A stretch of DNA of 64,000 nt from Guillardia theta CCMP2712. Taxonomy: Eukaryota > Protista > Cryptophyta. A program made the translations under genes and the position numbers. Shown in pieces: positions 11,194-58,619 of the stretch (position 1 is its first letter; the number at the start of each line of letters is the position of its first letter). The notes under the pieces are model-generated. The model was not told the origin of the DNA. It saw nothing but the letters and a program-made list of their open reading frames with translations, and did no database searches. Where the stretch lies: contig NW_005434505.1 of NCBI RefSeq assembly GCF_000315625.1, forward strand, positions 34,677 through 98,676. Reading direction: 5' to 3'.

Positions 11194-11372
11194 TGAATGG
11201 AGCTTCAATATTGTTGAATCGTTACTAAATCCTCTTCTCCCTCCCACTAACCCCCATCAGAAGCAGAGCAAGAAACCTTGCATTCCATAAAGTTTGTAAT
11301 ACAAAAATAAATCGCGAGTGGAGTCTAATCACAACAGTTTCATGTCTCGCCTTTCTTGTATCCCTCCCTCTG

Positions 11373-24880: not shown

Positions 24881-25188
24881 TTGAGCCTGTAAACATCAGC
24901 GGAACCATCCTGACAATCAGGAGAGCCTGTCGAGGAGGCTTGACCCCGACAAGGCACTGTCGCACAGGCCATACTATGCGGCGAGAAGGGAAAATACTGA
25001 CAAAGAGAAACAACCCAAATCCTGCCTACCGTAGTACTGCCTCCGATACCCGGTCCAGTGCTCAGGTCCGATCCCCAAATCCGATTTGCAAGTTGGGCGG
25101 CAGATTGAATCTGCCAGTGACCGGGCTTTAAGTTCAGTGCCGACCTTACCGTCAAGTTACCGCATATCATAGCCTCCTGGTTCAAATC

Positions 25189-25244
25189 TTTACTCAAAGT
25201 TAAGTTAAAGATCAGTACGAGGAACGAGGACAATCAGGAGAGTC
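25189..25244 (+). repeat. Dispersed ~45-nt core repeat, copy A
   Basis: TTTACTCAAAGTTAAGTTAAAGATCAGTACGAGGAACGAGGACAATCAGGAGAGTC; also at 28029, 49102(-), 49181(-), 58250 and partially at 24912. Confidence 0.9.
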
Positions 25245-25290
25245 ACCTAGTAGTATGCCGGTAACCGGTCAGGGTGGCCGGGCCGCGATG

Positions 25291-27911
25291 CATTCCATGG
25301 CATTTACTAACGCCCAATTATAAATTAATATCCTTTTAACAAACACTTGTACCTGTTAATTTGATCATAAGCATACAGTTTTTAGTCAATTTTGTACCAG
25401 AATGATTTGTACCACTCAGTACTCTTTTATATTTGTTTTAAGCATTTGAGTTCCGGCTTACACGCCTCTTGGCTGCTCTCTTCCCTGTGTACCGGTATGT
25501 TTGTCTGATATTAAGGGGGTAGGGTTATTCGTATATTTCGATACACGCTCATGAAATCTTATTAGTGTCAGCCATTGACGAGTGTAGTAAATCCAGCCAA
25601 TAAGTATTTTTGTTTTCAAATCAAGGAGTCGTATGCCAGCTAGCAACGGCAATATTTTTTTTCTACACCGGTTGTTTTATATAGATACCTACCCCATGTC
25701 TATAGGGTGCCACCGAAACACAGGTCCCCTTGCCCCCGATCAAAGAGCAAATAAAAATTCATTAAAAATCCTGAGATCCCCATTGCAAGTATCCCTCCCC
25801 TCCTCCTTCCTGCTCTTCTCCCTCCCTCCCTCCCTCCCTGCTCCCCTCCCTTCCTCCCTGCTCCCTCCCTCCCCCCTGTTCCCCTCCCTCCCCGTTGCTT
25901 CCCTTTCCCTTGCGCTCCAGTTATAGACACCAAACAAATGAATCTTCACCGTCGTGTATCAGCAACAAATGGAATTCAGAGAAGGCGAAGGCAGGAAGAT
26001 TTCGATACATTCTTGGAGCAGGAAGAGACTTGTGATGAGTCAAAGACACCTGAAGATTTGAAGCTTCGAATGATCCTGCATACGTCAGTTGATGATCGAG
26101 ACTTGCCCAGGATGTACTGGAAAAAGCCAGGCAGTAATTTGAATATTATGCTTGAGCCTGGCACAGGGGTTCAATATCAGTGTGAAGATCACAGGGGCGT
26201 TGAAGTGAATCGACTGGGCATGATCAAATCGCTGCACTCAGATGCACAGGTTGTCGAAGTGTACATCATGTACAATGGAGTCCTCTTGGAACATGTAGAC
26301 GAAACCATTATAACTAATCGAGTGCCCTGTGTGGCCCTGAAAAGAATTTTGAACAAAGTTGGAAACCGTGATTGTTATCAAGCAATTTACAAGGATACGG
26401 ATGAAATAAATGCTATACCAAAAATGTGTTTCTTCAGCTTTCCTTGCATGTTGGAGCATGCCAACGATGATCTCCACGATAATTTCAGAGTGCATGGGTA
26501 TATATTTTTTCATGAAGACGACATCGAAAATAATAAATACTGTGAAATCTCTCACTTCTCGATTGCAAACCCGGCACCACTCGTTGAAAAGATGGCGCAA
26601 ACAACTTTCTGTTCAGCGGCGGAGTACAATCGGATTTGTCGAGATATGACCGAGGTCAAAAAGATGTTCAATCAGTGGTTGAAGTCAAGGAGTGAGACCT
26701 TTGAGAAAAAATTTTGTTTGTTGTTTTCCATTGATTTTCGTTGCTTTCGATTGCTTTACAATTTTTGTTTGTTGTTTTCCATCGCTTTACGTGTGACATG
26801 CTCGTCACAAGCCATGTTTATGAACTCCGAAAACCTCAGCATCTTTTCGCTGCCTGTTTCACAACCTCGGAATCATCGCCGTCTTTGTCCAAACCTACAT
26901 CCGCAAGATGTTCCTATTCGCTTGGGCACCCGCTTGTCTCCATGCTTCTGTTCCCTACAACTGATAAAAACATTACATTCGCAGGAATGATATTCAATGG
27001 AGACTCTACCTTATGTCTTAGCTCGCTGGTTCTGATACTGAGAAGTCCTGAGGGAAGTTCATTCACATCCGGCATTCATGGCGTTGAATAGTTCATCGAT
27101 CTTACACTTGCGATCTATTTGCAATCAAGTTGCCTACACGACTGACATGCCTTATGCTTATGTGCTTGGTTGACACAGAGAGGAGGAAGTATGGGTCTTG
27201 TAGAATGCCAACCAAAACAACAATCAATTGCCTAATCAGAGAGATCCTTTACGAGAAACAATCTTGACACCAAACAACTCTACAGTCAGAGATGTGCTCG
27301 AAGCTCAATCATACGAAAGAGGGTTGTGGATGCTTGATCACCAAAAACGAGCAAATTCTCCATCTTGCAATGAGCATCAAAAGGATTCGAAAACAGCCCT
27401 AGGCTCTAGAATCCATGGTGATGCTGATTCCTACAGCTTCCTTTGAAAAACAAGCTCGAGCTGTTTGAAACGTCGTCTTGCAGTATGCCGCAAAAAGTAC
27501 AAACATTCACACATGATTCAACCTTGGATGGCCTGGTGCTTGAATACGATGAAAGAGCCATTGGCTGAGAGCCATCTGGGATGCAAACAAACGCCGCCTG
27601 CGCCGGTGGGTGCGGATGCAGCAATGGGGGAAGGGTAGGGCAGGCGATTTTGGTTGTATATGCACCCCCCAGGCGTGTAAAAGCGTGTAAGGTCAAAAAT
27701 AGTTTTAATGTTTGAAACCTTGTTGTTTGGAGGAAGCAAGAATACTTGTAAACCTAAAACTGCTCGACACGGTCCCCGATTCAAACATACTTTCAACCAT
27801 TATCGAAGTTTCTGGTACAAATTTTCAGTGCGCCGACCATTCAAAAATCCTGGGCTGAGGTACCCCGCTCGAAAATGATCAAAAGCGAGCATTAGAAAAT
27901 GCCATGGAATG
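25291..27911. mobile_element. ~2.6-kb TIR element with no recognisable transposase
   Basis: 23-bp TIRs CATTCCATGGCATTTACTAACGC (25291-25313) and rc of 27889-27911 CATTCCATGGCATTTTCTAATGC, 2 mismatches. AT-rich subterminal regions. TSD unresolved (GATG left, GATC right). Confidence 0.72.
25938..27640 (+). CDS. Element-borne hypothetical protein with a BAH-like segment (long first exon, further small exons)
   Basis: ORF 25938-26990. RLGMIKSLHSD..VEVYIMY..ETIITNRVPCVALKRILNKV loosely resembles the BAH pattern. Likely donor at ~26691. Confidence 0.5.
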
Positions 27912-28028
27912 GATCATCCGACTCGGATGACTCTGTGAAAGACCGTCTGAGTCGTGCGAATTAAAGTAAAATCTTGCGAATCTTAGCAGGAGTTAAACTG
28001 AGACGGTCTCCTGCCTGTGACTCATTCA

Positions 28029-28061
28029 TTTACTCAAAGTTAAGTTAAAGATCAGTACGAG
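28029..28061 (+). repeat. Dispersed core repeat, copy B (3'-truncated)
   Basis: TTTACTCAAAGTTAAGTTAAAGATCAGTACGAG, identical to the first 33 nt of copy A. Confidence 0.9.
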
Positions 28062-29032
28062 CCTCCGAGCAAACGGCCGGCGTGACTCCTTCAATAATTT
28101 AAAAGGGCTTTCTGGCAGGAGGTCCCCGGAGCTTCGGAAGTTCGGAAAGGGTCGGCGGTGACGGGTGACAACGGCGGAGAACCGGGCTCGGAGGCTCGTG
28201 TAAGACAGGACCGTACAATTGAGTCACGGGGATACGGTACACTGATACCCTGGCAATCCGATGACTAGGCTTATGGCGCCGATGGTGGTGACCCATGGCT
28301 TTTTAAATTAATACTGCGATTAAGAAATCGATGAGCATGCGAGGTTGTGATGGTAGTACGTAAGATAGAGAAGCTTGCTGATGGCGGCCTAGCAGGGAAG
28401 AGGCACGAGCCTCACATGGCCGACCCAAAGGCTATAGGTAGGCTATTGTCCCTTTCCACTTACTATGAAAATTAAGAAAAGTCCAACCTTGGGGTATGGG
28501 GAGGGAGATAGATGAAGGACATCACGGGACGGCAGGGGTGGAGCACGAGACGAGAGCAAACCCTACTGAACGACGAGAGGAGATATTGGTAGCCCACCAG
28601 ACCACCGGTGCTTGCTTCTGGTAAAACAGGGGTACATCATATGAAACCACCGGTCCTTGAAAAGGTAAATTGAGGGGTAAGGAGGCGGCGTGCGGAAGAC
28701 GCGAAAGTGACTTCTTTCGCACCTGACCTACAAAACAGACTCCGGCAGGAGGGGTCCTTTTGATTGATTTTAGTGGGGTGATGGGGGTCCGAAACGGGGG
28801 TGACAATAGAAAGAAGGTGAACTGGTCATCACATAGCTCGAACACAGCGTTTCGGGAGAACCCCTACCACCTGTTCTTACCATCTTTAAACCGGTACTTC
28901 TAGCCGGCCCCCAAAGTGATAAGATTACAACAGGGAGCTATGATTCAATAGCTCCAACCTTCGTCCCTCCTCAAACTCATCCTCCCCTTCTTGGCGTACC
29001 AACGTACCTCCAACCAGTCCGACTTTTCTCTT

Positions 29033-29954
29033 ACCTCCCCTCCTTCCCTTCGCTCCATCCCTGCCATCCCTCCCTCCTGCCACTACCCAACATCCTCCTC
29101 TCCTCCGCCCTCCCTCCCCCGACAAACAAGCTTTCCGCGCTTCATTGCTCGACAACAAGCATCCCCGACGACCGCTCGTCTCCCCTGGACTCTCTCGCAT
29201 GCTAGGCTTATTGCGCTTATTGATCTTGGCCGCGTCTCTGGTGCTCGCGGCCTCCACCGCTCTCGCCTCCTCTCCTCGTGCTCCCAAGCTTTCCCGCGTC
29301 TCCATCGACGTGGATCTCTCTGGACTGCTGCCGGCCAAGACCAGGCCTCTACGCCCTGACGTGCATGGAAGCAGCATGGTCAGCTCTCAGAGCGAGGGGC
29401 CTCGCGCAGGCACCCGCTGTATCCGCCTCCGCGGAGGCAACTGCCTCGACTCCTCCGCCAACCTCGCTGAGCTCACGTCGACGGTGAGCGAGCGAGTGCC
29501 GCTGAGGAGCGAGGGGGCAGGATGCAGCACAAGGCGATGCTGGAAGCTCAGCAGGACGGTGGAGTAGAGGAGGAGGAGGGCGCCAGTATTCTTTGACCAC
29601 GAGATGTATTCTTTAGATGTACCACTAGCTGATATGGATTGTGAATGAATCAACTATCCCTACTCATCAGAGTGTCTGTAGCATCGCATGCGCTCACCGA
29701 GCCCTCAATCTCATGGCGCGAGACGCGTAGACGGGCCAGCATGTCGGCGACATGCGCGAAGACGCTCGAGAGGGAGCGGGGGCCGTCATGTGAGGCTGGC
29801 GATGTCAGAGAGGTCGGTGAGGGAGAGGGGCCTTGAGTCTTGAAACCATTCCTTGATGTGGGTCTGCTGGCGGTTGGCCATGGAGAGGAGCCGGGCGGAG
29901 TGAGAACAGTTGGGGTAGGCGAAGAAGGCAGCATGGCTGGAGAGGCTTGTCAGA
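29033..29954. repeat. Left arm of a ~920-bp near-perfect inverted duplication
   Basis: Reverse complement matches 32477-33398 with only scattered substitutions. Confidence 0.95.
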
Positions 29955-30080
29955 CTCGTGGAGGAGAGGGGAGGGGAGATGATGGGAGGGGAGGAGGGGA
30001 GGAGTGGACCAGTTGCCGGAGAAGCAGGAGCTCCGAACGCACGCGAGGCCTCTTCCGTCCACACCAACACCGAGGCCTGA
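29199..30080 (+). CDS. Signal-peptide + RLRGG protein, copy 1 (downstream exon structure uncertain, possibly pseudogene)
   Basis: MLGLLRLLILAASLVLAASTALA is a clear hydrophobic leader, followed by CIRLRGG (29424-29438) and a GTGAGC donor at ~29484. Confidence 0.5.
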
Positions 30081-30099
30081 CCAACAAGGTCATGTGGCC

Positions 30100-31700
30100 C
30101 CTTTTTGTTTCTCTCTTCCTCCTCTGTTGCCCGTCACCCCCTGTCTCTCCGCCGCCCCCGCTAACCCTGTACCTCCTCTCACCGCAATCTTGGAAGAGAC
30201 AGTCGTCTATCGCTGCGGCCGCCACGTCCGTTACCGTTACTCCGCATCCCAAGCTGCCGAAAGGAGCTTCGCCATGAGTCTCGTCTTGAAGGATGACACG
30301 GAAAGGCGATTGAAGATTAAGATCTCCCATCTCCTGCCACACGTCACCCTCATCCCCACTCATGCTCTTGCTACCTTGCTGTCCTGGTCCTTCCCTCGAT
30401 GAACAATCTGAGCACATGCATGCAGCAAACCGGACGGTCGGAAGCTCAACTTGACGCTTTCAAGCATCTCGCTCACTTGCAGCGTGGTGACTTCCTTGTG
30501 AGGCGCATCAGAGGGACTGAGAGAAATCTCCGCGCATGCCTGGCTGCCGTCGTTGATCGGCGGCGGGTCCCTCGCAATCACCTCGGCAAGATGCTCAACT
30601 TGAGCTGGAGCGAAGAACTGAAACAAAGGCAACAGCATCACTGTCACTGCCGGCAAACTAGACATCACGACGAGCCACCTGTGCTGCGTTCCTCTTGCTC
30701 GCCCCGATACCCCTGAGGGTGCTGTACCGAATAACCAACGTCGAGCAGTGCATCGCAGTGATGCCGTCCTCCGCAGGCTCCTCTGGAGACAGCCCCCCGA
30801 CATGGGTGGCTACCAAGGTGCAATTAGATTGCAGCGAGAGACCTGAGTCGCGAATCATCTTGTGCTATGAGTAATCCTTCACTCACAGCAACACACTCCT
30901 TGCCCGCAGAGGACAGAGCAGGCAAACATCGCCCAGGGTCCTCCTTGCACGTGCAAGAGGATCTGGCAAGCCCTCAAAGTGAGTCAAGCAGGAGGAGGAG
31001 GAAGAGGAGGAGACGTCAGCTGAGTCGGCAGAGGAGAGTTGGAAGCGGAGAGATGTGATGGAACCACTGCAGCCTTTGGCGAGGACGTACTTGCCCTCAA
31101 GAGTCTGTAGCATGAAGGTGTTAGCTCGGGAGTGGTGCAGGCAAACAAGTTGATACGGATGAGCTGAAGTTGGTGAGAACAGACAGCACTCCCTCGGTCC
31201 TCACACCTCCTTGGCAGAAGCTGTAAGAATCTAGTCGTGCTCCTCTTTGATCCGCCGGCTGCTGCTCGCTCTGCCCTTCGAAATGAAGAACCCTCTCTCC
31301 CTGCGCGGCGTCTCAGTTCAAACGGGCGGGAAGGGAAGCAAGAGAACATGGAGAGGGAAGCAAGAGAACTCACTCCGTGGAACTTTGACGTCACGATGGT
31401 CGTGCGCCTCTTCTGCCTGCTCGCATGTCTCCCTCTGGGAAAGATTATTCTCCCATCCCTGTTCGCTCTGTGTATGGCAGGACGTAGAGAGCTTCTGTAT
31501 GTTCAGCTTTCTGTGAGGAATGACAATGCAAGAAGAGAAAAGAAGAAGACCTGCTCTTCACCACAACATCTCGATCTGAGATATCTGCAAACATTCGCCG
31601 AGAGCAGAGTTCAGACAGAGCAAGGAGAGCATGATGCCCGATAACTGTCACATACCAAGTGAGCGAAGGAGAGTGAGGACAAGCCATCAGGAACATGAAT
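30100..31700 (-). CDS. Hypothetical multi-exon gene between the inverted arms
   Basis: Series of minus-strand exon-like segments (ALYVLPYTERTGMGE, MLQTLEGKYVLAKGCSG, LQSNCTLVATHVGG, QFFAPAQVEHLAEVIAR, DLNLQSPFRVILQDE). Confidence 0.45.
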
Positions 31701-32379
31701 CATGACTGCAGACTGCAAAAACAAGATGCAAACAAACATCGACAACACTCACAACACCTCCACTGTTTCATTACACACTTGTTTCCCCTCGTTCCGATTG
31801 GAGCTGCAAACTATCAGACGATGACGCCCATCGAGGCGGGAAGGATGAGAGAAGAAGCAGAACAAGATTCGTCAAGGTAGTCCTCATCTCACAGACTTGT
31901 CTCCTCGTAGAATCTCAGGTGTAGAACGTCCATCTTGTTCTATTGCAGTCTCTACACTTGGCTTTGTAACCTGTACGTGTCCTGGCTTGCTAGCACAACG
32001 GACAGACATTGAGCGAGAAGGTGGAGCAGCTTGCTCCTCTCCTCCTCTACACCATGTCTCTGCGTACCCAAACCAGCATCAGCCCTTCTGCCATGATGCT
32101 CCTGCGGCCTACCCCAGGCAGCTGCCATTTTGCCACATGGGGTTCGGAATTGTAATAAGAAGAAGGTTTCATGCATCTGCCTATAGATGGAACTAAGTAT
32201 CATATTGAGGCGGGCTTGTGTAAGAGATACAACCCGTCACAACGCCAAATAGCGCGCATGGCGTGCACGTAAGGGAAGAGGATCAGGTCAAGAGCAGTGC
32301 ATGGAGAAGATCTTGAGAGACATGAATGAATCATATGATATCAAGATGTTATATGAATTCACTACGCCAGAATTGATAG

Positions 32380-33232
32380 GTCATCCAACGGATGCTTCTC
32401 CTGCGTTCGGAGCTCCTTTTACACCAGCTAGGTGATAGCTCCACTCGGCCTGAACTACAGCCCTCCATGAAGCTACTCTGACCAGCCTCCCCAGCCATGC
32501 TGCCTTCTTCGCCTACCCCAACTGTTCTCACTCCGCCCGGCTCCTCTCCATGGACAACCGCCAGCAGACCCACATCAAGGAATGGTTTCAAGACTCAAGG
32601 CCCCTCTCCCTCACCGACCTCTCTGACATCGCCAGCCTCACATGACGGCCCCCGCTCCCTCTCGAGCGTCTTCGCGCATGTCGCCGACATGCTGGCCCGT
32701 CTACGCGTCTCGCGCCATGAGATTGAGGGCTCGGTGAGTGCATGCGATGCTACAGACACTCTGATGAGTAGGGATAGTTGATTCATTCACAATCCATATC
32801 AGCTAGTGGTACATCTAAAGAATACATCTCGTGGTCAAAGAATACTGGCGCCCTCCTCCTCCTCTACTCCACCGTCCTGCTGAGCTTCCAGCATCGCCTT
32901 GTGCTGCATCCTGCCCCCTCGCTCCTCAGCGGCACTCGCTCGCTCACCGTCGACGTGAGCTCGGCGAGGTTGGCGGAGGAGTCGAGGCAGTTGCCTCCGC
33001 GGAGGCGGATACAGCGGGTGCCTGCGCGAGGCCCCTCGCTCTGAGAGCTGACCATGCTGCTTCCATGCACGTCAGGGCGTAGAGGCCTGGTCTTGGCCGG
33101 CAGCAGTCCAGAGAGATCCACGTCGATGGAGACGCGGGAAAGCTTGGGAGCACGAGGAGAGGAGGCGAGAGCGGTGGAGGCCGCGAGCACCAGAGACGCG
33201 GCCAAGATCAATAAGCGCAATAAGCCTAGCAT
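32380..33232 (-). CDS. Signal-peptide + RLRGG protein, copy 2
   Basis: First-exon translation identical to copy 1; diverges inward of 32477 but retains GAPNA. Confidence 0.5.
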
Positions 33233-33398
33233 GCGAGAGAGTCCAGGGGAGACGAGCGGTCGTCGGGGATGCTTGTTGTCGAGCAATGAAGCGCGGAAAG
33301 CTTGTTTGTCGGGGGAGGGAGAGCGGAGGAGAGGAGGATGTTAGGTAGTGGCAGGAGGGAGGGACGGCAGGGATGGAGCGAAGGGAAGGAGGGAAGGT
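32477..33398. repeat. Right arm of the inverted duplication
   Basis: Reverse complement of 29033-29954. Confidence 0.95.
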
Positions 33399-34712: not shown

Positions 34713-34747
<35 letters not shown>

Positions 34748-34907
34748 ACTGATCGGGCCACTGCCGCGCACCGTGACTGACGATGCCGTCATCAGTGACA
34801 GAGCCACGGTCGGACCTCACCGGCCCCCCCGGTGGCCGGGCCGTGGCATCACTGACTTCTGATCCGCACGGAGTCGGGCCGTCCAACTTGTTTGTCCGTT
34901 GACAGTA

Positions 34908-38311: not shown

Positions 38312-38379
38312 AGAAGGCTACACACGCTTGGTGACTCGACTCCGGCTCCTGCCCTTCTTGGGCTTCTCCGCGAAAGGAG

Positions 38380-38950: not shown

Positions 38951-39185
38951 CTCGTCGTCTCCTCCTCGCGTTCCCCTCACTCTGCATCGGTGTCTTCGAT
39001 CTCTATCCTCGTGATGCTCGTTCTCCTCCTGCTTGTCGCTCCTCGTGCGTCCTCGCCCTCCTCTGCATCTGCCAGGGTCTGCAGACCGCCATGCCTCCTC
39101 CTAGAGAGTCGCATGATTTCAAGCCCGCCTCAATAAGATTTTTTTAAACACTAGTTTGAACATGGCGCGAACGCGAGGGCAAACA

Positions 39186-42000: not shown

Positions 42001-42187
42001 GAGCTGCACACAGATAATAATTAATCAAGGCAATCTTAAATACATTCTCGATAGATTGAGCAGACGTCAAGACGAGGAACGAGCTTGATCCTTTTCGACC
42101 CAAATACAGAAGATCTTTCTAGTCAGTAAACTCGTGTTTCCAAAAGTATCTTTATGTCTCTATTCGTAAATTGATGTGGCAGTGATG

Positions 42188-42440
42188 TCTCTATCGGTCT
42201 GCTCATGTAGTCTCTATCGGTCTGCTCATGTAGTCTCTATCGGTCTGCTCATGTAGTCTCTATCGGTCTGCTCATGTAGTCTCTATCGGTCTGCTCATGT
42301 AGTCTCTATCGGTCTGCTCATGTAGTCTCTATCGGTCTGCTCATGTAGTCTCTATCGGTCTGCTCATGTAGTCTCTATCGGTCTGCTCATGTAGTCTCTA
42401 TCGGTCTGCTCATGTAGTCTCTATCGGTCTGCTCATGTAG
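42188..42440. repeat. 23-bp minisatellite (TCTCTATCGGTCTGCTCATGTAG) x11
   Basis: Perfect tandem copies with no spacers. Confidence 0.97.
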
Positions 42441-42764
42441 TGTCTGTTGATGCAGTCGCATGTAGTCTCTTTGAAGCTTCATACACTCTGGTTGTGGATG
42501 AGGCGTTTCAAACAACCGTCATTAGGCCCGGCAGGGGGTGGGGTGGGGGTCCCAATTTCCTGTTGTTAGCAGTTCGAGGGGTAGGGTGGAGAGGATAAGA
42601 AAACCGACATGTCCGCTAGGTAGAAGACATGTACAGGAATCGAAGTAGAAGCTGATTGGACGAGTTGACGTTACAGACTGCCTTGATAACAACATCACAA
42701 CCATCATCTCTCGTGTCTGATTGAAGTACTTTGGACTTTAAACTTCTTTGGATAGGCTCGAAAC

Positions 42765-47483: not shown

Positions 47484-47561
47484 GGAAAAGATATTTTGTT
47501 GAGGAAATATGCGGTTTGTTTGGAATATGATTAAACTTGTTAATCTAACATCGATGTGACA

Positions 47562-48772
47562 TCACTTCTTCTTTTTCCCAGCTGCTTTTCCCTTCTTTCC
47601 CTTCTTCTTCTTCGGATTCTTGAGGTCAGACACACACTCTCGAGCGAGATGCATGCGGATGTTGCATTGCAGAAGGGTTGCAGCACGAAACTCTCTTTCC
47701 GCCGCCGCAACTCGCATGGCCTCAAGTTCTTTCATTCTCCTCTCTTCGTCTTCCTTGGCTTGTCTTGCAGCGATGTCTTGGTTGTATCGCTTCTCCAGCT
47801 CGTACAATCTCAATAGATCAGATTCACGTTCTTCTTTCAAGTTCTCCAGCTCCTTTGTCTTGAAAGCCAAGTCCGCCTCGAACTTGTGATCCCATGCCTC
47901 AGATTTCTCGGACATGGCAACTAACTTCCTTCTCTGAAATTCCTGTTGAAGCTCGTTGGCTTGTTTTTCTATGTCGATTTCTTTCTCGATCTGTTCAATC
48001 CGATCTTGCAATTCTTTCATCTCTTTTTCTCGTTCTCGCTGTGTGCAGTGGTAATTCGCTTTAAACTCCTTTGCAAGATATCGAAGCTCGATCGCAGTCT
48101 CCGATTTCTTCGCTTGCAATGTTTCTTTCAACTCCGCAATCAACTCGTTCTTGCTCAAAACCTCTCTCTCAAAGTTGCTTCGTTCTTCGTTGAGCTCTTG
48201 TTTCAACCTGGCCACAGACTCGCTCAGCTCTTTCTCACGCGCCAGAACTACTTTCATGTGCTCCATCATCCGCTGGCCTTTCTCAACAACTTCCGCCAAA
48301 GAGTTGAAACTTGCAAATTGCATTTCATGTGCTGGGTTGACAAGTAGAGTCTCAAGCGCTCCACGTTCAGCTCGAATCTTTTGCATATTCCCTTCTAAGT
48401 TTGGGTTGTCTTGCAAATTTCTTGTCAAAACTTTGGTGCTCTGCCTCAGAGACTGAGCGACTTGCTGGATCTCATTTTCATTCGCCTGATACTTCATTCT
48501 GTTTGAAATGCCTTTCATATTCCTCCTCTCTTGAATGAGCTCTTCGTATCTCCTCTCCAAGGACCTCTGATCCTGCATAATCCTTGAAATCTCTTCTCCC
48601 AGCATACTTCCCAGCTCCTCATTATGGAAATCTGAAGTCAGAGATGCAAGGATTCCTAGTTTTTCAACCTGGCCAGCACGAGTCAAGCACATCAGATCAG
48701 GATTGACTGAGGTACCGCTGTTTCAATTGTGGCCGTAATCCGCTGACACTCGACCAGAGTGAAAGAATCCAT
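47562..48772 (-). CDS. DRC9: Dynein regulatory complex subunit 9 / IQCG-like coiled-coil IQ protein
   Basis: MDSFTLVECQRITATIETA|VEKLGIL..ERRYEELI..LRQSTKVLTRNLQDNPNLEGNMQKIRAER; C-terminal IQ-like motif AATLLQCNIRMHLAR and a KKKKGKKGK tail. Confidence 0.8.
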
Positions 48773-49101
48773 CCTGCTGCATGAAGTTACAAGAGCATCA
48801 AGAGATTTCCTCCAAGCTGAGAGCAGCTTGCATAATTAACATCAAACATGACTCCTTTCGGCGTTGAATTCTTCGCCTCTAACTTCAGGCTGACTTTGCG
48901 CTCTTGCTACTTTGTTGCCCTCCACTGTGTGCCTATCACAACATCGCGTTCTCGTCTTCCTCTCTTGTCTCTCCTCGGCTTGTTAGCACTGAGCTCGCAC
49001 TAAGAGTCATGCAGCTGCCATGATGGCACTGCCTGCAAACGTGCGGGGGCTTGCCCATCATGCTGCTGCCTGGCCAACGGCCGTCCGATCAGATCGTGGG
49101 C

Positions 49102-49212
49102 CTCCTGATTGTCCTCGTACTGATTTTTAACTTAACTTTGAGTAAAGTCGGACCGAGTAGGCCCTCCGACAGTAGTCAGGTTGTCCTCGTACTGATTTTT
49201 AACTTAACTTTG
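49102..49212 (-). repeat. Two copies (C, D) of the dispersed core repeat in the divergent intergenic region
   Basis: CTCCTGATTGTCCTCGTACTGATTTTTAACTTAACTTTGAGTAAA (49102-49146) and TTGTCCTCGTACTGATTTTTAACTTAACTTTG (49181-49212). Confidence 0.9.
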
Positions 49213-49383
49213 TACCGTACTAGCCTCTTGTCGCCTGAAAGCCTACTTAAGTTAAAAACATGAAAGTCGAGCGATGTCGCTGTGGCCGCCGCCGAAGGCA
49301 TGAAACGCATATTTCAAGTTTCATGATTTGGAAGCTGATATACGGGGTACTTCACCTGAAATACATCCTGGACCTCATCGATC

Positions 49384-50012
49384 TTGACAGTTTCACACTG
49401 CATTGAATATACAGATTGCAGGCACATGTGCTCGGATATCAAATTTGAGTCAACGCTCTTCAGCAGACTCCGATCATACAGACGGTCTTTCTGTTCAAAG
49501 TCTCGAGGTGCATGCTGCGTTTGTCTTGTTACTTGCCCGGCACTGCATCATGTGCTCGCAGACCATCGGCAAAGCTGCGTGTGTTGTGTTACGATCATGA
49601 TACGGAGACGGTGGTCGACATTGCAAGCTTGCAGCCTTTTCAAGAGGGTACAACTGTACAAGCCTGACGGAGATAAGCTGCACGGGGAGAGCGAAGAGGT
49701 GATTGAAATGGGATGTCAGAGAAGAGAAGGGAAGAGAAAAACGACGAGAATTCTCGTGACGACGAGAATGTATTCAAAAGAAGGCATAATTGACCTTTCT
49801 AATGCAAACAAGGACGAGTTCACGGAGGGTCATGTCAGACTTGCTTGTGAGGTTCAAACATGTTTAAGTTTCCTCACTTGTCAGTCTCTGATATGTACAA
49901 ACGCTCGCAGTTCACACCCGCGTCGAGCTCAGACGATGTTGAGATCGACAGCAAGCAGGAGAACAATCATAGTTTGCAGTTGTTGGAGGACAGGATCGAG
50001 AACAGAGAGTGA
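49384..50012 (+). CDS. Hypothetical multi-exon protein (may extend past the MITE to ~50329)
   Basis: Exon-like segments ending ..DEFTEGHVRLACE|FTPASSSDDVEIDSKQ..EDRIENRE. Confidence 0.4.
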
Positions 50013-50057
50013 GTTCAGCCCTGTGGTTGTGTGTGCAGGTTTGAAACATTCACAGTA

Positions 50058-50247
50058 GGTGTGTCCGGTGCGCTACTGTCGGTATTTTTCCTGGTACAAA
50101 TTTCACCGACAGTTCGTTAAATTTCAGTACAACCGTTCTCAACGGTAAACGTACAGACAACAGTACCCTACCGCCGACAGTTCTTACTATTTGTCAAATC
50201 CAATACGGCCAGAATAACGTCACCGACAGTAGCGTACCGGACACACC
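50058..50247. mobile_element. 190-bp MITE flanked by TA (Tc1/mariner-like target)
   Basis: TIRs GGTGTGTCCGGTGCGCTACTGTCGGT and ACCGACAGTAGCGTACCGGACACACC (1 mismatch), TA on both sides within a CAG-TA-CTG palindrome; internal CCGACAGT repeats. Confidence 0.85.
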
Positions 50248-50516
50248 TACTGGAGAGGCCAAACGCGAGACCCGATTTGCATGGAAAACATCTGGAAATG
50301 ATTTCATGACGAAATTTTCATGTGAAAATTAATTATTGTTTTTAACGACTTATAATTATTTTCTAAAAGTCACACTGTGAACTGGGTGCGTGTCACAGGA
50401 TCTCAAGATTCAATTGGTACAATTTCATCTCATTGAAAACGAACTATAATAATAATAATAACAAACCAATATCAGGAAAGATTTCGCTTTTGCGCTCGAC
50501 CCAGCTGTTTTGTGTA

Positions 50517-52480
50517 TGAACGCGGAGATGTCGTACAGTTCCAAGCTGTCCAGCTCTCTTGTGCTCTTCTTTCTCATCAAAAGCTCAGTGCAAGGTGATC
50601 GCATTTGTGGCAAGGACAAGATTCTCAACCAAGCGATGTGTACGAGCTGTTGCGACATGCAACATCTCCCCTGCTCGACAGACAAGCAGTACTCGACTTG
50701 TTGCGTTGACTCAAACTGTACGGCATCAACACGCAGCGGAGCCAGTTGTACAATTTCAAGCCCATGCTATTTTGCGATGCTCGACTACTGCTGCACACCA
50801 TGCCCCCCGGGGAATTTTTCAACCGACACCGCTCAAGGATCAGGTTGTTTCCCTTGCTCGCAAGATCAGATAGTCACCGATACTGGTTGCATCCAACGGA
50901 ATACCTCGAATAAAAAAGATCCGGCGCGTGAAAATCATCCCCAGAAGCCCTGGTTCATGAAGAGTGGCCTATCTTCTATCGCCTTCATCGTCATTCTCTC
51001 GCTCCATTTCTTTGTAGTCTTCATCACTGTCGTCTTGCAGAACTGCACTGTCGATCAACAAGATACCCGTTTTGTCGGCAAGTGCTTGCTCCCGGTGCTA
51101 TGGTTCGTGTATGATATTTCGTTCATGAGCGCAAGGTTCAACTGGTTCTTGACATCCTCGGAAGCTAGGGAAATGATGACATACAGTGTCAATGGCAACC
51201 CTGACAATCTCATATGGCTGTCCAAAGATGACATTAAATACCAAACTTGTGCCCCCCCCAGCTCGCTCAGCTACATCGGGCAGAATGCAACTTTGTGCAA
51301 GTTTAGCGTGTTTGAATTCACGACCAATATTCTTGGGCAAGAGAGCAAATACGAGAACAACTCGTCCAAGTTTAGTGTTGGCCTAGGACTCATCATTTGG
51401 TCCTGCATTTCCATTTACATGATGATGAAGCAAGCGGACCTTGAGAGTGAGTGGAAAGAAGATGTTGAATGTGAGGAGGAGAAGGAGAAGGAGAAGGAGG
51501 AGGAGGAGGAGGAGGAGGAGGAGGAGGAGGAGGAGGAGGAGGAGGAGGAGGAGGCCCACAGCGCTAGTGATGTCGTCCCTGGAGTCAGTGCTACGGAGCA
51601 GCCAAGAGCAGTGACAGCGATTGCAGTCAGCAGCCCCTTCGAGACTAATCAGAAAGGATGCCACCAGACAAAGTGGGAATGGCTAAAGCGCAGAGCTCTC
51701 GGGGTTGTGATCTCATCGCTTCTGGCGAGCCAGCAGTCGCTTGTCTTGCTTCCTCTGACCTCGATGGAGATCACACCGCACTGCTATGAGCTACAGAGCG
51801 ATCTCCCGGTCACCTCAAGGCAGGCAGCGTGCTGGCACAAGTGGTCTACCGCAGGGATACCTTACGGAGTTCCTGCTATCGCGGTTGGCTTCTTGCTCAC
51901 CTTGATATGTTACCCGGACTCGGACAAGGAGGAGGCTGGTTGCTGCATATCCTTGATCACGGGGCTCCTGTTCTTGACCGGAGTTGTTTTGTTCCTCACC
52001 GGAGTCGGGCTCTTCTTGTTTTGGCTCTTTGGTGGCATCATCATCGGGGCTTGGTTTACCTACACCTCAACGAAGATTCTTCTTGACCTGGCTTTCACAA
52101 AGATCTTTGCTCCCGTCCTCATTCTTATTTCTAGTGACTTCGTCTTGCAATACGCCGTTGTACCGACTCGCTGCACATGGTTTCGAGTTCCTCGAGGGAT
52201 CGTCAGTATGAAGATGAACCTCTTCCATGTCAAAGCTCGAGTGGACGGCCGGGTTTCCTCCGCCTTCCGAGAGCTGGCAAAGAGGTACCTGCCCTGCTGC
52301 TCGTGCGACTTCCAACCTCAGCAGCAAGGGAATGGCCCTTCCGAGTCCAGCCTTACGAACCAACCGTCTGATGAGGCGATCAGAAACGTCGTGGATACGA
52401 TGGAGAAAGCCCTGGAAGTGCAAGACAAACGAAGCAAAAAATCGCGGCGCAGGGAGAACTTGCATCCTTATGACGTGTAG
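50517..52480 (+). CDS. Multi-pass membrane protein with N-terminal Cys-rich (TNFR/ephrin-receptor-like) ectodomain
   Basis: Intronless ORF with signal peptide, CTPCPPGNFS..GCFPC repeat, several hydrophobic helices and a poly-Glu loop. Confidence 0.7.
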
Positions 52481-52600
52481 CCTTCACATTGAACGGTGTT
52501 TTCGGACATGTCACAGTGCTGAGTGCTTGCTATAAGCCTGAATTCATTCCTGAGATGTTAACTAAAGTATAGTATAACCCGACCGGCGGCGACCGGGCCC

Positions 52601-52864
52601 GAACCGGGCCACTCGCCTCCCCAGCCTCTCCCGGACTTCTATGAAGTGGAGCGCCTACTCGCTGATCGAACGCAGCGCGGACGCAAGGAGTATCTCGTTC
52701 GCTGGAAAGGTTTCTCCTCTGCTGATGACACATGGGAACCAGTGGAACATCTCGTTCGCACTCGAGCGCTTCGCAACTTGGTTCAACGCTACGACAGGGC
52801 CAAACAGCGTGAGCGACGTCCGGTACCTTCCTCTGCTCAGGGACGGCGTTCACGCCGCCTTTGA
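52601..52864 (+). mobile_element. Orphan chromodomain fragment, resembling a chromovirus integrase C-terminus
   Basis: PPQPLPDFYEVERLLADRTQRGRKEYLVRWKGFSSADDTWEPVEHL; aromatic cage residues present; no in-frame ATG and no upstream pol. Confidence 0.7.
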
Positions 52865-53875
52865 CCGCTCTTTGACTTTGGTCTAGGTGCGAGTTTGCGG
52901 GAGCGTATCAGAGCAAAGAAAGCGAAGTTTTCTGAGTCCTGAGCACTCCAAGAAAGCGCAGAAAGAGCGTATCAGAGCTCATAGGATAGCGAGCCCAACA
53001 CAGGAGCGGTCAACACTCGAAATGTGGACAGCACACAAGGATAGCCTCTACAACTATCCAGACGAAAGACAGTGATTCTCTAACGGCTACTTTGGTTCAG
53101 AAGTCGGACCCCTCCGGGACGGCTTCCCTATAGTATCAAGCACCGGTGGAGCTCTCCTTTCTGGTAGAAACAAGAACAGGAGCAGGGCATGGACCAAAGG
53201 GGCCATAGCGACGGCACGAGGCAGGAAGACTCGTGCAAGCGAGGACCACTACCCCTGGGACTTCCACAGGGCTATAAAAGGATCAAGATCTTCATCTCTA
53301 GGTGGTCTGTCTTCCCTCCCTCTGTGTACCACGCATTTCCCTGTGTTGGTGTGGTTGCTGCAATAAAGCTTGATAATACTGTCTAGCACCTTCTGTGTGA
53401 TCCAGCGGAGGTTCTTTGAGCATTCGCTTGGCTAGTGTGCAACCCGTAAAGCTTCGGGGTGTAACATAAATTGCAGCCACGGCCACAGCGGCTCAACTTG
53501 AAGGCTTGGCAAGGCCCGGCAGCGCCCTGTCCTTAGTCGCGGCCACTGGCATCATCAAGTCGCGGCCCCGCGGTGAAACCGGGCGGGGCGGCCGCCATCG
53601 ATGGCGGCATGAGTACCGTACAGTCACAGCGGGCCTTGCCGCCAGCCACCGGCATGACTGGCACTGCGCCGCCGCGTGTGCCGGACGGTGGGTGGCCCCG
53701 GCGGGCCGCGCCGGCGGCGGCGGGCCGCGGCGGCGGTGACTCACCCCGGTTCCTTCCTCGTCTCAGGCGGGCCCAGTGGAGTGGCGGCAGGGCGCGTCCA
53801 TGCCAAGTGGAGCGAAGAAACTTCGGAGGCACAAGCAGTCGGAGGCACAAGCAGTCGAAGCTGAAGGCTGACACA

Positions 53876-54471
53876 AGCTAAGACTGAGTGAGCATACCAG
53901 CTAAGACTGAGTGAGCATACCAGCTAAGACTGAGTGAGCATACCAGCTAAGACTGAGTGAGCATACCAGCTAAGACTGAGTGAGCATACCAGCTAAGACT
54001 GAGTGAGCATACCAGCTAAGACTGAGTGAGCATACCAGCTAAGACTGAGTGAGCATACCAGCTAAGACTGAGTGAGCATGCCAGCTAAGACTGAGTGAGC
54101 ATACCAGCTAAGACTGAGTGAGCATACCAGCTAAGACTGAGTGAGCATGCCAGCTAAGACTGAGTGAGCATACCAGCTAAGACTGAGTGAGCATACCAGC
54201 TAAGACTGAGTGAGCATACCAGCTAAGACTGAGTGAGCATGCCAGCTAAGACTGAGTGAGCATACCAGCTAAGACTGAGTGAGCATACCAGCTAAGACTG
54301 AGTGAGCATACCAGCTAAGACTGAGTGAGCATACCAGCTAAGACTGAGTGAGCATACCAGCTAAGACTGAGTGAGCATGCCAGCTAAGACTGAGTGAGCA
54401 TACCAGCTAAGACTGAGTGAGCATACCAGCTAAGACTGAGTGAGCATACCAGCTAAGACTGAGTGAGCATA
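53876..54471. repeat. 23-bp minisatellite (AGCTAAGACTGAGTGAGCATACC) x~26
   Basis: Tandem copies with a recurring A>G variant (GCATGCC) in four units. Confidence 0.97.
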
Positions 54472-54492
54472 TCAGTTTTAAGGCTGGTGAGT

Positions 54493-57400
54493 ATGGCAGA
54501 AACGAAAGCTGAAAATTGCGTTGACTCCATGAAGACATCTCGAATATTGAAAACATACATGTCAGGGCGCTGGTTTTGAACCTCGTGGTGTGCACTGCCA
54601 GCCATGTCGAACAAAATGTAACGTGATCAAGATATGAAATATCATCGAGAGCTTGCAGAACTTGCTCGGGAGGGTAAACTCACATCCTTCGATGCTTCCA
54701 TGGCAGACCTGCTCTGTGATTCGGACGAGCATGGTTGGCTGCAGGATGACCTGCAAGGCTGCAGCATTCGTGGGCCTGGGTTCTCTTTGGACGGCTCCAG
54801 CATAGTTCACTGGGAGGTGGCAGTTCGTGGTATTGGAGGCGAAGTCTACAGCGCGTGCCTGGTAGGAGGAAGCGATTCTCAAGGTCGCCCCGATCGACTG
54901 CAAGCCGCTGCGGAGTGTGAGAGTGAAGACCTGGTGAAGGCTCTGATCGATTGCTCTCTTGCCAGCAACGGCTTCGCACAGGAGTTCTCTTCCTCTTCGT
55001 CCTCCGCAGCCCGCGAATACGAGAGAAGTTTAGACCTGGACCTGGTAAGGGTTGTGCTGCCTTCCGCCTATCTCAAGCGTGACTTGCCGTTGTTAGATTG
55101 TGAATCATAGCTGTCCTGAGGCTTGTGACATCCTTGCAGACCTCCGCGACTTCTTGCACAAGATGCAAGCTTTGTCCTCTACCACGACAACTGCACATCA
55201 TGATCTTTCTTCGCAGAATCAGACAACTGCCTCACCCGAGGGAAAGCAGACAGGAGCAGGAGATAAGCTTTCCAGAAGTCTTGTAGACGAGGAACGAGGT
55301 CTGGTTAAGGTGAACGAAGGCTTGCCAAAACTTCATCGAGTCAATGGCTCGTCGCGCTCAGCGCAAGGGAGTCGAACTCATGCAGGAACAGAATCATCCG
55401 ATCAGAATGCAAACAGCATTCTATGCACATCCATCACATCGCTGACAGTATCATCAATCCAGGGGCTTCAAGGGGAGGAGATGCAGGACTACAAGAGTGA
55501 AAAGTTCGACATACTTGAGGAGGAAGTCCAGCTAGTTCTGAAAGACCTCACGCTCAAGTTGTTGGACATTGATCGGCTTATTTCTGTACGAGAGTTGGGA
55601 GAATTGATCCATGAAGATGAGAACAAAAGATTGCAGACTAGACGTGACATTCTTCGAGATTGTTCAATACTTGTGCTACTCGTACAACCAACTTGGTTGT
55701 CCACTCCTTTTGTTTCGCAGGTTTTTGATCTACTCTGTGTCAATCGAGCAGTTTTTATTGTCTCCTTATCCAAAGACCCCGTCGACAAGATAGATCTCGA
55801 GATAAACAATCAAAATCTACAAATTTTTGACAGCAGGGGCCCATCCATTGAACGGCTTGTCCATCTGATCAAAGCAAGAACTTCTCCAGGCCGTGAAGAA
55901 CACGGAGCAGATATCGTCACCATAATTTACAGGTAGAGGCTTTATCTGGTTTTTTTCCTCACGACATTGGCAGTTGGAAGAACTCTTTGGATGCATACGA
56001 GCAAGGAAGCATACCCTCCTTGAATTCTTGTAGAAATTCTTTCGAAGATCCCCGTATGATTCAATACCAGCTTCAAAGATACTTTGATGGCATTAATGGC
56101 TTTCACTGTTGGATTGATATTGAACATGGCAGTGACTTGATGAGATTTGGGAGACTCTCGTCGCATTTGAGGGCTCAATACAAGTCAAAATGCGTTATCG
56201 TTGCTGCAAGTGACGATTTATTGGCTGATAGCGAAAATTTCCTCAGGGAATTCATGCTTGAGTCTGGTTTCCATCTTTCAATTCCCGTTGTCGTTGTTCA
56301 GCTTGGTGAACTCCAACCTGCAAACAAATCTCTGTATGATAGCGACTTACAAAGGCTGTTGCTTGCTCACAAGTCAATCCGATTCTCAGGTATTGAGGAA
56401 AAAGGGACATTCGAAATGCGTGTTCACCAATTGGCACGATTGGTAGAAAAAGAGATAAGGATGCAGTCTTGCATCGAGAATAGCGTGCCTTTGATTCCCC
56501 GACCTCTCATTGTTCATCACACTGGACAGAATTCAAGCAATGACGCCAGGAACTCTCACTTTGAAAGCTTCTCATTTCTGCGCAACGCAAGGATGAGAAT
56601 TATGAACAGATTTCTGCGAGTGACAAAGGTCTGTCGTCATGGTGACATGCACCTTGTTCCAGGAGATCTTTGCGCGTTTGTTGGTTTTGAGCAGGAAGCT
56701 CTTGCAGTGGAAGCATACAACCCACCGTCATCCAGAGTCAGAGATCAGTTGCAGTTGATCAAGGGAGAACGGATCAAGCTCCTCCACAAAATTCCTCTGG
56801 AAGTCGAGGACGGATTATGGTATGAAGGACAAAATAAAAAAGGTAGAAAAGGACTGGTGCCTTCAAGTCATCTTCAAGTTTTGAGCGCTGGAAACAAGAT
56901 CTGGGTGTGCGATTCTGTGCATCAGGTTGGATTGTTTGACCATGAGAACTTTGAGAACAGCTTCGATGAAAGCCATTTCAAATCGGAGATGAGTGCTGAA
57001 GATGCAAGCCGAGCTAGCAGTTTCAACGAGCTTGTGAACAAGTATGGTGAATTCTTCCAGTCGGTGTTGGCAAAAGCTTTGGACATTCAAGTTGTTGACT
57101 CAGCTGCCCATAAGGTGCTAATGTTGACACAAGAATGCAAGCTAGAAGACTTCCAGGAGCTGACGCGAGACATGGAGTCGACGACCGTCCTATCAAGGGA
57201 TGAAAAGCAAGAAGCTTTGGACGAGGCAAGGAAGAGCTTGCTTTCATGGTATGAGAGAGTTATTCTTGAGACGATTGAAAGGATCAAGATGAAACGAACC
57301 ACTATGGATTACGATATGAAGATGCTCAAGATTCTGGATGTGACATTGAAAGATGTTTTTCTCAAAGGAAAGAGGCACTTGATTCCTCTCTCTTCCTTCA

Positions 57401-58173
57401 TCGAGAATGATCATTGTGTTTACAATCGGATCAGCCTCGTTGACTTGATTCAGCAAGTGCGCCAAGCTTTGCTGGTGGAATACCCAGTTGACCTGCAGAA
57501 CGCTCGCGATGGCGAATTTCTGGATACAGAAGAAGACTGGCAGAGTCTGTTTGACAAGGTTGTGAGTGACTGGCATGGCGAGAATCAATTTAGCGGGACT
57601 CTCGTGCTCTACGTCATTCCCAAGCAGCAAAGGACTCATCACTTGATGGGCGTACCCCGACATGTCGACATGCATCACCATCATGATGAAGTTCAACTGA
57701 TCTGCTCGACAGTGATTTTAGAACGCACTCTCCCAGGCACCGCGAGACGAGACATAGACTTGCAGCCGTTGAAAGATGTCATCGCGACATGTCAGAGCCA
57801 TACAGTTGCTGTCTCAGGCATCAGAACCTCCATGGCATGGTCCCTCGTTCGACAGCTCCTCTGCAACATGTTTGGCTGCTGTGTGCTGTTGGAATACACC
57901 CCCTTTGACATTGCTGGAAACCTGGAGAAACAAGGAAAGGATGGACAGGGGAAGGGAAAAGTGCGGAAGCCACCCAAGAGCAGCAGGGGGCTAGCGAGCA
58001 AACACTCGTCAACCAAGACGATCCGGTCAGAAGCCGAGTGGAGAGAAGCGATCTCGCGGGTGGTGATAGACTCCAAGACTTACAACATCCTTGGCAGAAA
58101 GTTCTGCGTGGACTTGCTCCTTGATGCAGTACAGGACCTGAAGCCTCATACTAGTAGAACTTGCGCCTGCTGA
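54493..58173 (+). CDS. Multidomain protein: TIR-like x2, SH3, PB1-like (5' exons approximate)
   Basis: SH3: ALAVEAYNPP..QLQLIKGERIKLL..WYEGQNKKGRKGLVPSSHLQVL. TIR-like: ILRDCSILVLLVQPTWLSTPF and DPRMIQYQL..GFHCWIDIE..SKCVIVAASDDLL. PB1-like: DGEFLDTEEDWQSLF..TLVLYVIP. Confidence 0.65.
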
Positions 58174-58249
58174 TGGTCAACTGTGAAGTACTATTCAGAA
58201 ATAAAATTTCAACAGTTGACGTGTGGCTCGGCCAGACAATCTCACTGTC

Positions 58250-58285
58250 TACTCAAAGTTAAGAACGAGGACAATCAGGAGAGTC
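58250..58285 (+). repeat. Dispersed core repeat, copy E (internally deleted)
   Basis: TACTCAAAGTTAAG-AACGAGGACAATCAGGAGAGTC, upstream of the actin gene. Confidence 0.85.
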
Positions 58286-58619
58286 CGTCGAGCCTCCGGT
58301 CACCAGTACCTGCAATGCCGATCGGACGGCCGCGTGACTCACGGCCCGTGCTGGTACTAAGGCTGCGGGACAGGCTGCGGGGCCAGCTGCGGGCAGTGGC
58401 TGCCGGGGGCTGGCCGGGGGCAGGGCCCGGCCGGCCAGCAGGGCGGCCAAGGAGACTGCAGAGGGGATGCAGGAGGGGATGTGGGCCGGGCTTGGGCTGC
58501 TGCTGGGGCTGGGACAGGGCCCGGGGGCTGGGATGTCAGTGTGGGATGCTGGTGGGATGTGGGCCATCGATTGTATGGGGCTATCAGTGCTTTGACAGCT
58601 GTCGCATCACCAACTTGAA

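What the first reader, a model, noticed from the sequence alone, without database searches (positions are those of the whole stretch)
24900..58560. Dispersed ~45-nt core sequence in GC-mosaic islands, varying as if copied by a template-jumping polymerase
Seen: TTTACTCAAAGTTAAGTTAAA(G/A)ATCAGTACGAGGACAATCAGGAG(AGTC) occurs at 25189(+), 28029(+), 49102(-), 49181(-), 58250(+) and as a fragment at 24912. All copies are intergenic, with no TIRs, TSDs or poly-A tail. They differ by truncation and by jumps near internal microhomologies: ACGAGG is duplicated in copy A, and copy E jumps from GTTAAG straight to AACGAGG. Each runs into non-alignable GC-rich DNA built from recurring words (GATCGGAC, CGTGACTC, GAGCCTCC, GGCCGG). 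Inference: this fits no standard MITE, SINE or satellite. It could record repeated synthesis from a short RNA or DNA template (telomerase-, RT- or Pol-theta-like) at open chromatin. This is my best candidate for an undescribed system.
Basis: partly seen in the sequence, partly recalled or inferred. Interest (0 to 1): 0.85.

Follow-up and report, generated by a model that had tools for sequence, protein, structure and literature searches.

The report
Cut-off tails of a retrotransposon
The repeated 45-letter sequence is the last stretch of a reverse-transcribed mobile element of the alga Guillardia theta, left thousands of times as very short, front-truncated copies near gene starts: an ordinary kind of mobile DNA, not a new system.

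Summary
The core sits at all six stated places, no shuffle reproduces it, and its flanks do not align. Public reads settle what it is. In two DNA runs the core has about 6,000-8,000 times single-copy depth. At least 20 other loci carry head-to-tail pairs in which the upstream copy keeps its full end and the next copy starts at a variable point after 2-40 spacer letters. This is the signature of target-primed reverse transcription with 5' truncation and template jumping, as in a LINE-type (non-LTR) retroelement. Longer copies continue about 17 nt past the core, and copy B has a 12-bp flanking duplication. RNA runs show no abundant discrete RNA. The core is not the G. theta spliced leader, and Rfam gives nothing. 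I could not fetch the full-length element, so its link to an RT gene rests on an earlier scan report (s1-433747: tail of a 4.35-kb LINE) and on a 4,150-nt RNA contig with the core 17 nt from one end. The scan noted what appears to be this motif on other DNA of the same genome. The 'recurring GC words' are only weakly supported here.

The parts
49102..49146 (+). Copy C: 45 nt, the longest uninterrupted copy; element sense strand is +, ending ...TTTGAGTAAA at 49146
   Evidence: summed contig depth about 607,000 against 72 single-copy in X1 and 36,000 against 5.8 in X2, with a sharp edge at 49146-49148.
49181..49213 (+). Copy D: 32-33 nt, 5'-truncated and lacking the last ~6 nt, 34 nt downstream of C in the same orientation (head-to-tail pair)
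   Evidence: The same arrangement occurs at 20 or more other loci (tables 5 and 5c).
25189..25244 (-). Copy A: core with a 7-nt tandem duplication (CCTCGTT/CCTCGTA on the sense strand), extending 4 nt into the family's upstream sequence (AGTC)
28029..28061 (-). Copy B: the 33-nt tail only
28062..28081 (-). 20 extra nt at the 5' junction of copy B. Together with the last 5 nt of the core they form a 14-nt perfect inverted match to 28186-28199, so the junction lies in an ACGAG microhomology
   Evidence: (I1).
28016..28027 (.). Left copy of the 12-bp direct repeat flanking copy B (candidate target-site duplication); the right copy is at 28082-28093
   Evidence: 11 of 12 identical, abutting the fixed end, 0 of 500 shuffles as good.
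58250..58285 (-). Copy E: tail with about 12 nt lost internally and the last AAA read as AGA. The stretch to about 58345 shares words with B and C
24912..24944 (-).
   Evidence: It matches the loose-end consensus obtained independently from X1, X2 and X7.

Best explanation
The core is the 3'-terminal stretch of a retroposon family of Guillardia theta. It ends ...CTTAACTTTGAGTAAA, with or without a few A. New copies are made by target-primed reverse transcription: a nick in the target primes cDNA synthesis from the 3' end of the element's RNA. Synthesis usually aborts after only 17-60 nt. The reverse transcriptase often jumps to the 3' end of another template RNA, which produces head-to-tail strings with a few untemplated letters between copies. 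The 5' end is then joined to the target at microhomologies. Shown here: the copy number, the fixed versus ragged ends, the tandem strings, the extension beyond the core, one TSD, and presence in four independent runs. Inferred: that a long RT-encoding master exists, that template jumping rather than repeated insertion makes the strings, and that the GC-rich gene-upstream islands are preferred targets because they are accessible or carry a favoured nick site.
For: All unless stated. Depth on the core against single-copy depth is 607,383/72.2 in X1 and 36,156/5.81 in X2, and 1,421 and 826 contigs were laid. Loose ends pile up at 49146/49147/49148 (60, 81 and 19 contigs in X1), and the sequence beyond them is heterogeneous (agreement 0.37-0.40) but starts A-rich. 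Depth is 320,064 at 49116 and 606,277 at 49125, the gradient expected from 5' truncation. In the 'goes back' and 'skips' joints the upstream copy always ends at 49145-49148, while the next copy starts at 49102, 49103, 49104, 49105, 49111, 49112, 49117, 49120, 49125, 49129 or 49130, with spacers such as AGA, AA and GG or 9-40 nt. No strand-changing joints were listed. Three runs give the same upstream continuation ...CCTCCTCGACT before 49102, and fragment F matches it. A minor variant (T>C at 49125, 15% of depth) is carried by A and B, and the major variant by C and D, which indicates subfamilies. Copy B has a 12-bp TSD and a microhomology at its 5' junction. A 4,150-nt RNA contig in X7 carries the core 17 nt from one end. 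General properties of non-LTR elements match: 5' truncation; 3' ends with poly-A, short repeats or neither; TSD, deletion or blunt insertion; template jumps; microhomology (PMC2881922). As an unverified lead, an earlier follow-up on other DNA of this genome reported what appears to be the same motif as the tail of a 4.35-kb LINE (s1-433747).
Against: I did not see a full-length element or any RT or endonuclease ORF; none is in the window (only some ORFs scanned). Only 1 of 5 copies shows a clear TSD. The A-tail is very short. Copies are far shorter than usual for LINE insertions: most are under 45 nt, and only about a third of the contigs that hold the 3' end run on past 45 nt. A short master RNA therefore remains possible. 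The summed contig depth is only a proxy for copy number.
Confidence: 0.8

Rival explanations
1. A short non-autonomous retroposon (SINE-like or 'solo tail', master RNA of about 60-150 nt) copied in trans by a LINE reverse transcriptase, rather than the tail of the LINE itself.
For: Most copies are 45 nt or shorter, and the shared extension could be traced only about 17 nt further. No long copy lies in this window.
Against: There is no tRNA-, 5S- or 7SL-like head and no Rfam match. RNA level is low: 58 reads among 19.8 million in X24. An earlier scan report describes a 4.35-kb element with this tail, and a 4,150-nt RNA contig has the core 17 nt from one end.
Confidence: 0.12
2. A selected cis-regulatory word (an AT-rich, TATA-like promoter module) kept at gene starts, not a mobile element.
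For: Copy C ends 40 nt upstream of the 5' end of the RNA contig of the minus-strand gene, which reaches 49062. The core is 30-40% GC inside 55-75% GC surroundings.
Against: Selection on a binding site does not explain thousands of copies with a truncation gradient from one fixed end, head-to-tail strings with untemplated spacers, or subfamily variants. Only three independent islands were seen, so the orientation bias is not significant.
Confidence: 0.04
3. DNA-level copying at breaks: Pol-theta templated insertions, or a tyrosine-recombinase (Crypton) site, or a Helitron or MITE end.
For: The 5' junction of B looks like a templated insertion from 115 nt away at a 5-nt microhomology. A Crypton lies in the same window.
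Against: There are no terminal inverted repeats. There is no Helitron-type hairpin or CTRR end (and the sequence itself). Templated repair copies nearby sequence, not one 45-nt sequence thousands of times with one fixed end.
Confidence: 0.03
4. A spliced-leader or other small RNA gene family. This was my first guess, because ...ATCA|GTACGAGG looks like a splice donor.
For: A donor-like GTACGAGG lies inside the core, and copy A is followed by a TACTAAC-like box. That box turned out to belong to the TIR of an inserted transposon.
Against: The published G. theta spliced leader is a different 17-mer (PMC5619915) and is absent from the window. Rfam gives nothing. RNA abundance is low and falls on both strands. 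There is no stable fold.
Confidence: 0.01

Closest known systems
5'-truncated ('dead on arrival') copies of non-LTR/LINE retrotransposons made by target-primed reverse transcription
   Same: Fixed 3' end, ragged 5' end, thousands of dispersed copies, an occasional TSD, microhomology at the 5' junction, and subfamily variants.
   Different: Copies here are extremely short, typically 17-45 nt, whereas hundreds of bases is usual for L1. The A-tail is only 0-3 nt. Copies cluster in GC-rich islands upstream of genes. The master element was not seen here.
R2/CRE-type (restriction-like endonuclease) site-specific non-LTR elements and their end-to-end template jumping
   Same: Head-to-tail junctions in which a complete 3' end abuts a truncated copy with a few extra letters, as described for the R2 reverse transcriptase (Bibillo and Eickbush 2004, cited in PMC2881922). 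No long poly-A. Other first readers called retroelements of this genome CRE-like.
   Different: The clade was not tested here. The 3' flanks are heterogeneous (agreement 0.37-0.40), so there is no single strict target site, unlike R2, CRE or SLACS.
Spliced-leader relics in dinoflagellate genes (recycled cDNAs)
   Same: Short, tandem, truncated copies of one leader-like sequence upstream of genes.
   Different: The core is not the G. theta spliced leader. The fixed end is on the opposite side, and the copies are not joined to intronless retrogenes.

Membership tests
Non-LTR (LINE-type) retroposon inserted by TPRT | All copies share the 3' end while 5' ends are variably truncated | tested here: met
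   loose ends concentrate at 49146-49148, depth rises from 320,064 (49116) to 606,277 (49125), and second copies in tandem pairs start at 11 different positions.
Non-LTR (LINE-type) retroposon inserted by TPRT | A full-length master encoding reverse transcriptase (and endonuclease) that ends in the same tail | not testable with these tools
   The rest of the genome could not be reached. The only leads are the earlier report s1-433747 and a 4,150-nt RNA contig with the core 17 nt from one end.
Non-LTR (LINE-type) retroposon inserted by TPRT | Target-site duplications of variable length, or deletions or blunt joins | tested here: inconclusive
   copy B has a 12-bp repeat, 11 of 12 identical, and 0 of 500 shuffles scored as well. 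A, C, D and E have none above chance.
Non-LTR (LINE-type) retroposon inserted by TPRT | 3' end with poly-A, a simple repeat, or neither | tested here: met
   the loose-end consensus starts AA, AAA or AAAG after ...GAGTAAA. A short A-run is compatible with the family (PMC2881922).
SINE | A Pol III-type head derived from tRNA, 7SL or 5S with an internal promoter | tested here: not met
   ARAGORN found 0 genes and Rfam 0 matches. The copies consist of the tail only.
MITE / TIR DNA transposon | Terminal inverted repeats and a fixed-length TSD | tested here: not met
   no inverted partner of the core ends. The only TIR pair nearby belongs to the separate 2.6-kb element at 25291-27911.
Helitron | 5' TC, a 3' hairpin followed by CTRR, insertion between A and T | tested here: not met
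   The end reads GAGTAAA. There is no significant hairpin (z-scores 0.35 to 1.4).
Spliced-leader RNA gene of cryptomonads | Carries the 17-nt leader CTCGGCGGCTGGTCAAG followed by a GT donor and an Sm site, with about 20 genomic copies | tested here: not met
   PMC5619915. The leader is absent from the window, and the core has thousands of copies and low RNA.

The most novel reading that the evidence does not exclude
The element's reverse transcriptase works mostly in an abortive, serial template-jumping mode. It writes strings of 17-45-nt tails specifically into GC-rich, palindrome-bearing islands at gene starts, possibly at GAGTCAC-type words. These thousands of AT-rich tails have become part of the promoter architecture of G. 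theta. The shuffled 'vocabulary' of the islands would then be partly a by-product of repeated nicking and microhomology-templated repair at these sites.
Probability: 0.12. Interest if true: 0.55.

Novelty: new member of a known kind. Interest (0 to 1): 0.25.

Why it matters
The result removes a candidate 'undescribed system' and explains a motif that several first readers flagged independently across this genome. For Guillardia theta annotation it means that several thousand short AT-rich patches in intergenic GC islands should be masked as retroposon tails. They should not be read as promoter motifs, small-RNA genes or recombination signals. The modest points of real interest are how short the copies are and how strongly they cluster just upstream of genes. 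These could be used to study insertion targeting and abortive reverse transcription in a cryptophyte. I found no open paper on the mobile elements of this alga.

Tried and rejected
Spliced-leader or first-exon reading: rejected after reading Roy 2017, the window search, Rfam and the RNA depth. The TACTAAC 'branch point' after copy A is part of the TIR of the 25291-27911 element.

RNA structure of the tail on either strand: not better than shuffles.

Alignment of the GC-rich flanks between copies in both orientations: only one 13-mer beat the shuffles.

Attempts to reach the full-length element or more G. theta loci all failed. The exact-pattern scans of metagenome contigs and viral contigs were empty. 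The look-up of encoding contigs on two window ORFs found nothing on record. Protein searches with the Crypton ORF and the TIR-element ORF returned no G. theta paralogues.

Literature searches for the sequence itself and for G. theta non-LTR elements found nothing relevant.

TSD search: only copy B is positive.

Word enrichment: GAGTCAC occurs 12 times against about 7.8 expected in the window, which is not significant by itself, although 5 of the 12 lie within 100 nt of a copy.

Full report
OBSERVATION. Reading the sequence gives six pieces:
- A, 25189-25244(+)
- B, 28029-28061(+)
- C, 49102-49146(-)
- D, 49181-49212(-)
- E, 58250-58285(+)
- fragment F, 24912-24944(+)

A self-blastn of the window links these pieces only through the 23-45-nt core. 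Local alignment of the adjoining 50-320 nt in both orientations beats shuffled controls only for one 13-mer shared by C and E. The core is 30-42% GC and its surroundings reach 75% GC. The description of A (duplicated ACGAGG) and E (internal loss) is correct. nhmmer and blastn-short with a 62-nt consensus find no further significant copy, apart from a weak inverted candidate at 49245-49264.

THE ORGANISM. Earlier follow-up notes of this scan name the genome as Guillardia theta. The best named relative of a window ORF is from Hanusia phi, a cryptophyte. I did not verify the species independently.

WHAT THE READS SHOW. I laid four public runs on window 48400-49600: X1 and X2 (DNA contigs from different years and studies), X7 (contigs, probably RNA) and X24 (raw RNA-seq reads).
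- Single-copy sequence has word depth 72.2 in X1 and 5.81 in X2. On the core the summed depth reaches 607,383 and 36,156, about 8,400 and 6,200 copy equivalents. This is a proxy, because contig depths are summed. 1,421 and 826 contigs were laid.
- The element is present in all four runs, so it is not an assembly or library artefact.
- On the + strand the repeat ends sharply. Loose ends lie behind 49146, 49147 and 49148 (60, 81 and 19 contigs in X1). What follows is heterogeneous (agreement 0.37-0.40) but begins with one to three A.
- Toward the other side the depth falls from 606,277 at 49125 to 320,064 at 49116.
- Contigs that continue past 49102 share ...CCTCCTCGACT in three runs. Fragment F in the window carries the same continuation. 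The unit is therefore not a discrete 45-mer.
- Tables 5 and 5c show at least 20 other loci with two copies in direct order. The upstream copy always runs to 49145-49148. The downstream copy starts at one of eleven positions between 49102 and 49130. Between them lie AGA, AA, GG or 9-40 other letters. No inverted joints were listed. C and D in the window form such a pair.
- A T>C variant at 49125 makes up 15% of depth. A and B carry it; C and D carry the major form.

INTERPRETATION. Three features stand out: a fixed end, a ragged opposite end with a steep length decay, and head-to-tail strings in which a complete end abuts a truncated start with a few extra letters. Together they mark target-primed reverse transcription by a non-LTR retroelement. 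Synthesis starts at the RNA 3' end, stops early, and may jump to the 3' end of another template. The review PMC2881922 states several relevant properties of such elements:
- They are often 5'-truncated through incomplete reverse transcription.
- They end in poly-A, short repeats or neither.
- They give target-site duplications, deletions or blunt insertions.
- They involve template jumps and microhomology at the 5' junction.

It also cites the end-to-end template jumping of the R2 enzyme.

Copy B fits this in detail. A 12-bp direct repeat (11 of 12 identical) abuts the fixed end and recurs 54 nt away (0 of 500 shuffles scored as well). The 5' junction lies in an ACGAG microhomology. The next nine letters are a perfect inverted copy of sequence 115 nt away (I1). 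This looks like a templated fill-in during end joining, but it is a single case. The other four copies show no TSD above chance.

WHAT IS NOT SHOWN. I could not obtain the full-length element. The window has no reverse-transcriptase ORF among those scanned. Scans of the metagenome and viral collections for the tail were empty. Two exact-protein look-ups and two protein searches gave no further G. theta loci.

The link to a long RT-encoding master therefore rests on two things. One is a 4,150-nt contig in X7 that carries the core 17 nt from one end (record 18). The other is an earlier follow-up of this scan on other DNA of the same genome, which reported a 42-bp motif as the tail of a 4.35-kb LINE left in about two thousand short copies (s1-433747). 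I treat that report as a lead, and only its truncation signature was tested here. A short non-autonomous master RNA remains a rival at about 12%.

RIVALS REJECTED.
- My first guess was a spliced-leader-like exon, because ...ATCA|GTACGAGG resembles a donor. The published G. theta leader is a different 17-mer with about 20 genomic copies (PMC5619915) and is absent from the window.
- Rfam and ARAGORN find nothing, and neither strand folds better than shuffles.
- In X24 only 58 of 19.8 million reads touch the core, on both strands. About a third of them come from one variant locus. There is therefore no abundant discrete RNA in that library, although small RNAs may be lost in such libraries.
- There are no terminal inverted repeats and no Helitron-type end.

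RELATION TO GENES AND ISLANDS. All copies are intergenic.
- C and D lie between a minus-strand gene and a plus-strand ORF starting at 49384. The minus-strand gene's RNA contig reaches 49062 and has a confirmed 47-nt intron at 48667-48713.
- E lies 77 nt after the stop of the upstream ORF and 335 nt before a downstream ATG.
- A and B belong to one island split by a 2.6-kb TIR element (25291-27911). Without that element they would lie 163 nt apart.

The 'vocabulary' of the islands is weakly supported here. B and E share CGAGCCTCCG and GGCCG(G)CGTGACTC in the same order, and C and E share GATCGGACGGCCG. The 8-mers are otherwise near expectation. GAGTCAC/GTGACTC recurs at junctions: in B's repeat, in A, in E, and in one RNA loose end. 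It may be a target preference or a promoter word; I could not decide which. Other first readers flagged such islands genome-wide. They are a separate question from the core.

VERDICT. The finding is real, and its 'template-jumping polymerase' intuition is apt. But it describes a known kind of object, the truncated 3' tails of a retroposon family, which this scan already met on other DNA of the same genome. I found no open paper describing it. I rate it a new member of a known kind, with low to moderate interest, mainly for the unusually short copies and their clustering at gene-upstream islands.

Noticed in passing
window 25291-27911: A 2.6-kb element with ~24-nt terminal inverted repeats (CATTCCATGGCATTT...) is inserted into the GC island between copies A and B. 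It carries a 350-aa ORF (25938-26990) with no Pfam match. The only database relative is 89% identical over a quarter of its length. Already noted as s1-439828.
   Followed up: partly
window 49270-49342: A second, different repeat: contig depth is about 55 times single copy in X1, with a sharp edge at 49270. Other copies are preceded by ...CCCCCGCGCCATGCC (agreement 0.72-0.98).
   Followed up: no
window 49147 onward, in run X7: Eight RNA(?) contigs run about 31 nt past the element's 3' end. Their low-agreement consensus contains GCTGGTCAAG, the last 10 nt of the published G. theta spliced leader (PMC5619915). Some copies may lie beside spliced-leader genes, or this may be chance.
   Followed up: no
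window 27940-28310: The island around copy B holds nested inverted repeats: 27940/27997 (13 nt), 28014/28220 (11 nt, GTGACTCA/TGAGTCAC), 28057/28186 (14 nt, perfect) and 28095/28301 (10 nt).
   Followed up: partly
window 29033-29954 and 32477-33398: A 922-bp inverted duplication at 99% identity.
   Followed up: no
window 10143-10502, 11364-11716, 12385-12731: Three copies of a ~350-bp segment, 89-97% identical, in +/-/+ order. They correspond to the RWP-RK triplet noted as s1-439744.
   Followed up: no
window 17034-17413, 42187-42470, 53873-54499: Tandem arrays with 28-bp, 23-bp and 23-bp offsets, 95-99% identical.
   Followed up: no
window 48667-48713 (minus strand): A 47-nt GT..AG intron of the minus-strand gene (ORF 47562-48692, weak IQ motif) is confirmed by an RNA contig. 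The transcript contig reaches 49062, 40 nt short of copy C.
   Followed up: partly
window 7865-9379 (minus strand): The Crypton-type ORF has its best named relative in Hanusia phi (34% identity over 50% of the query). No close G. theta paralogue is in the protein collection.
   Followed up: no
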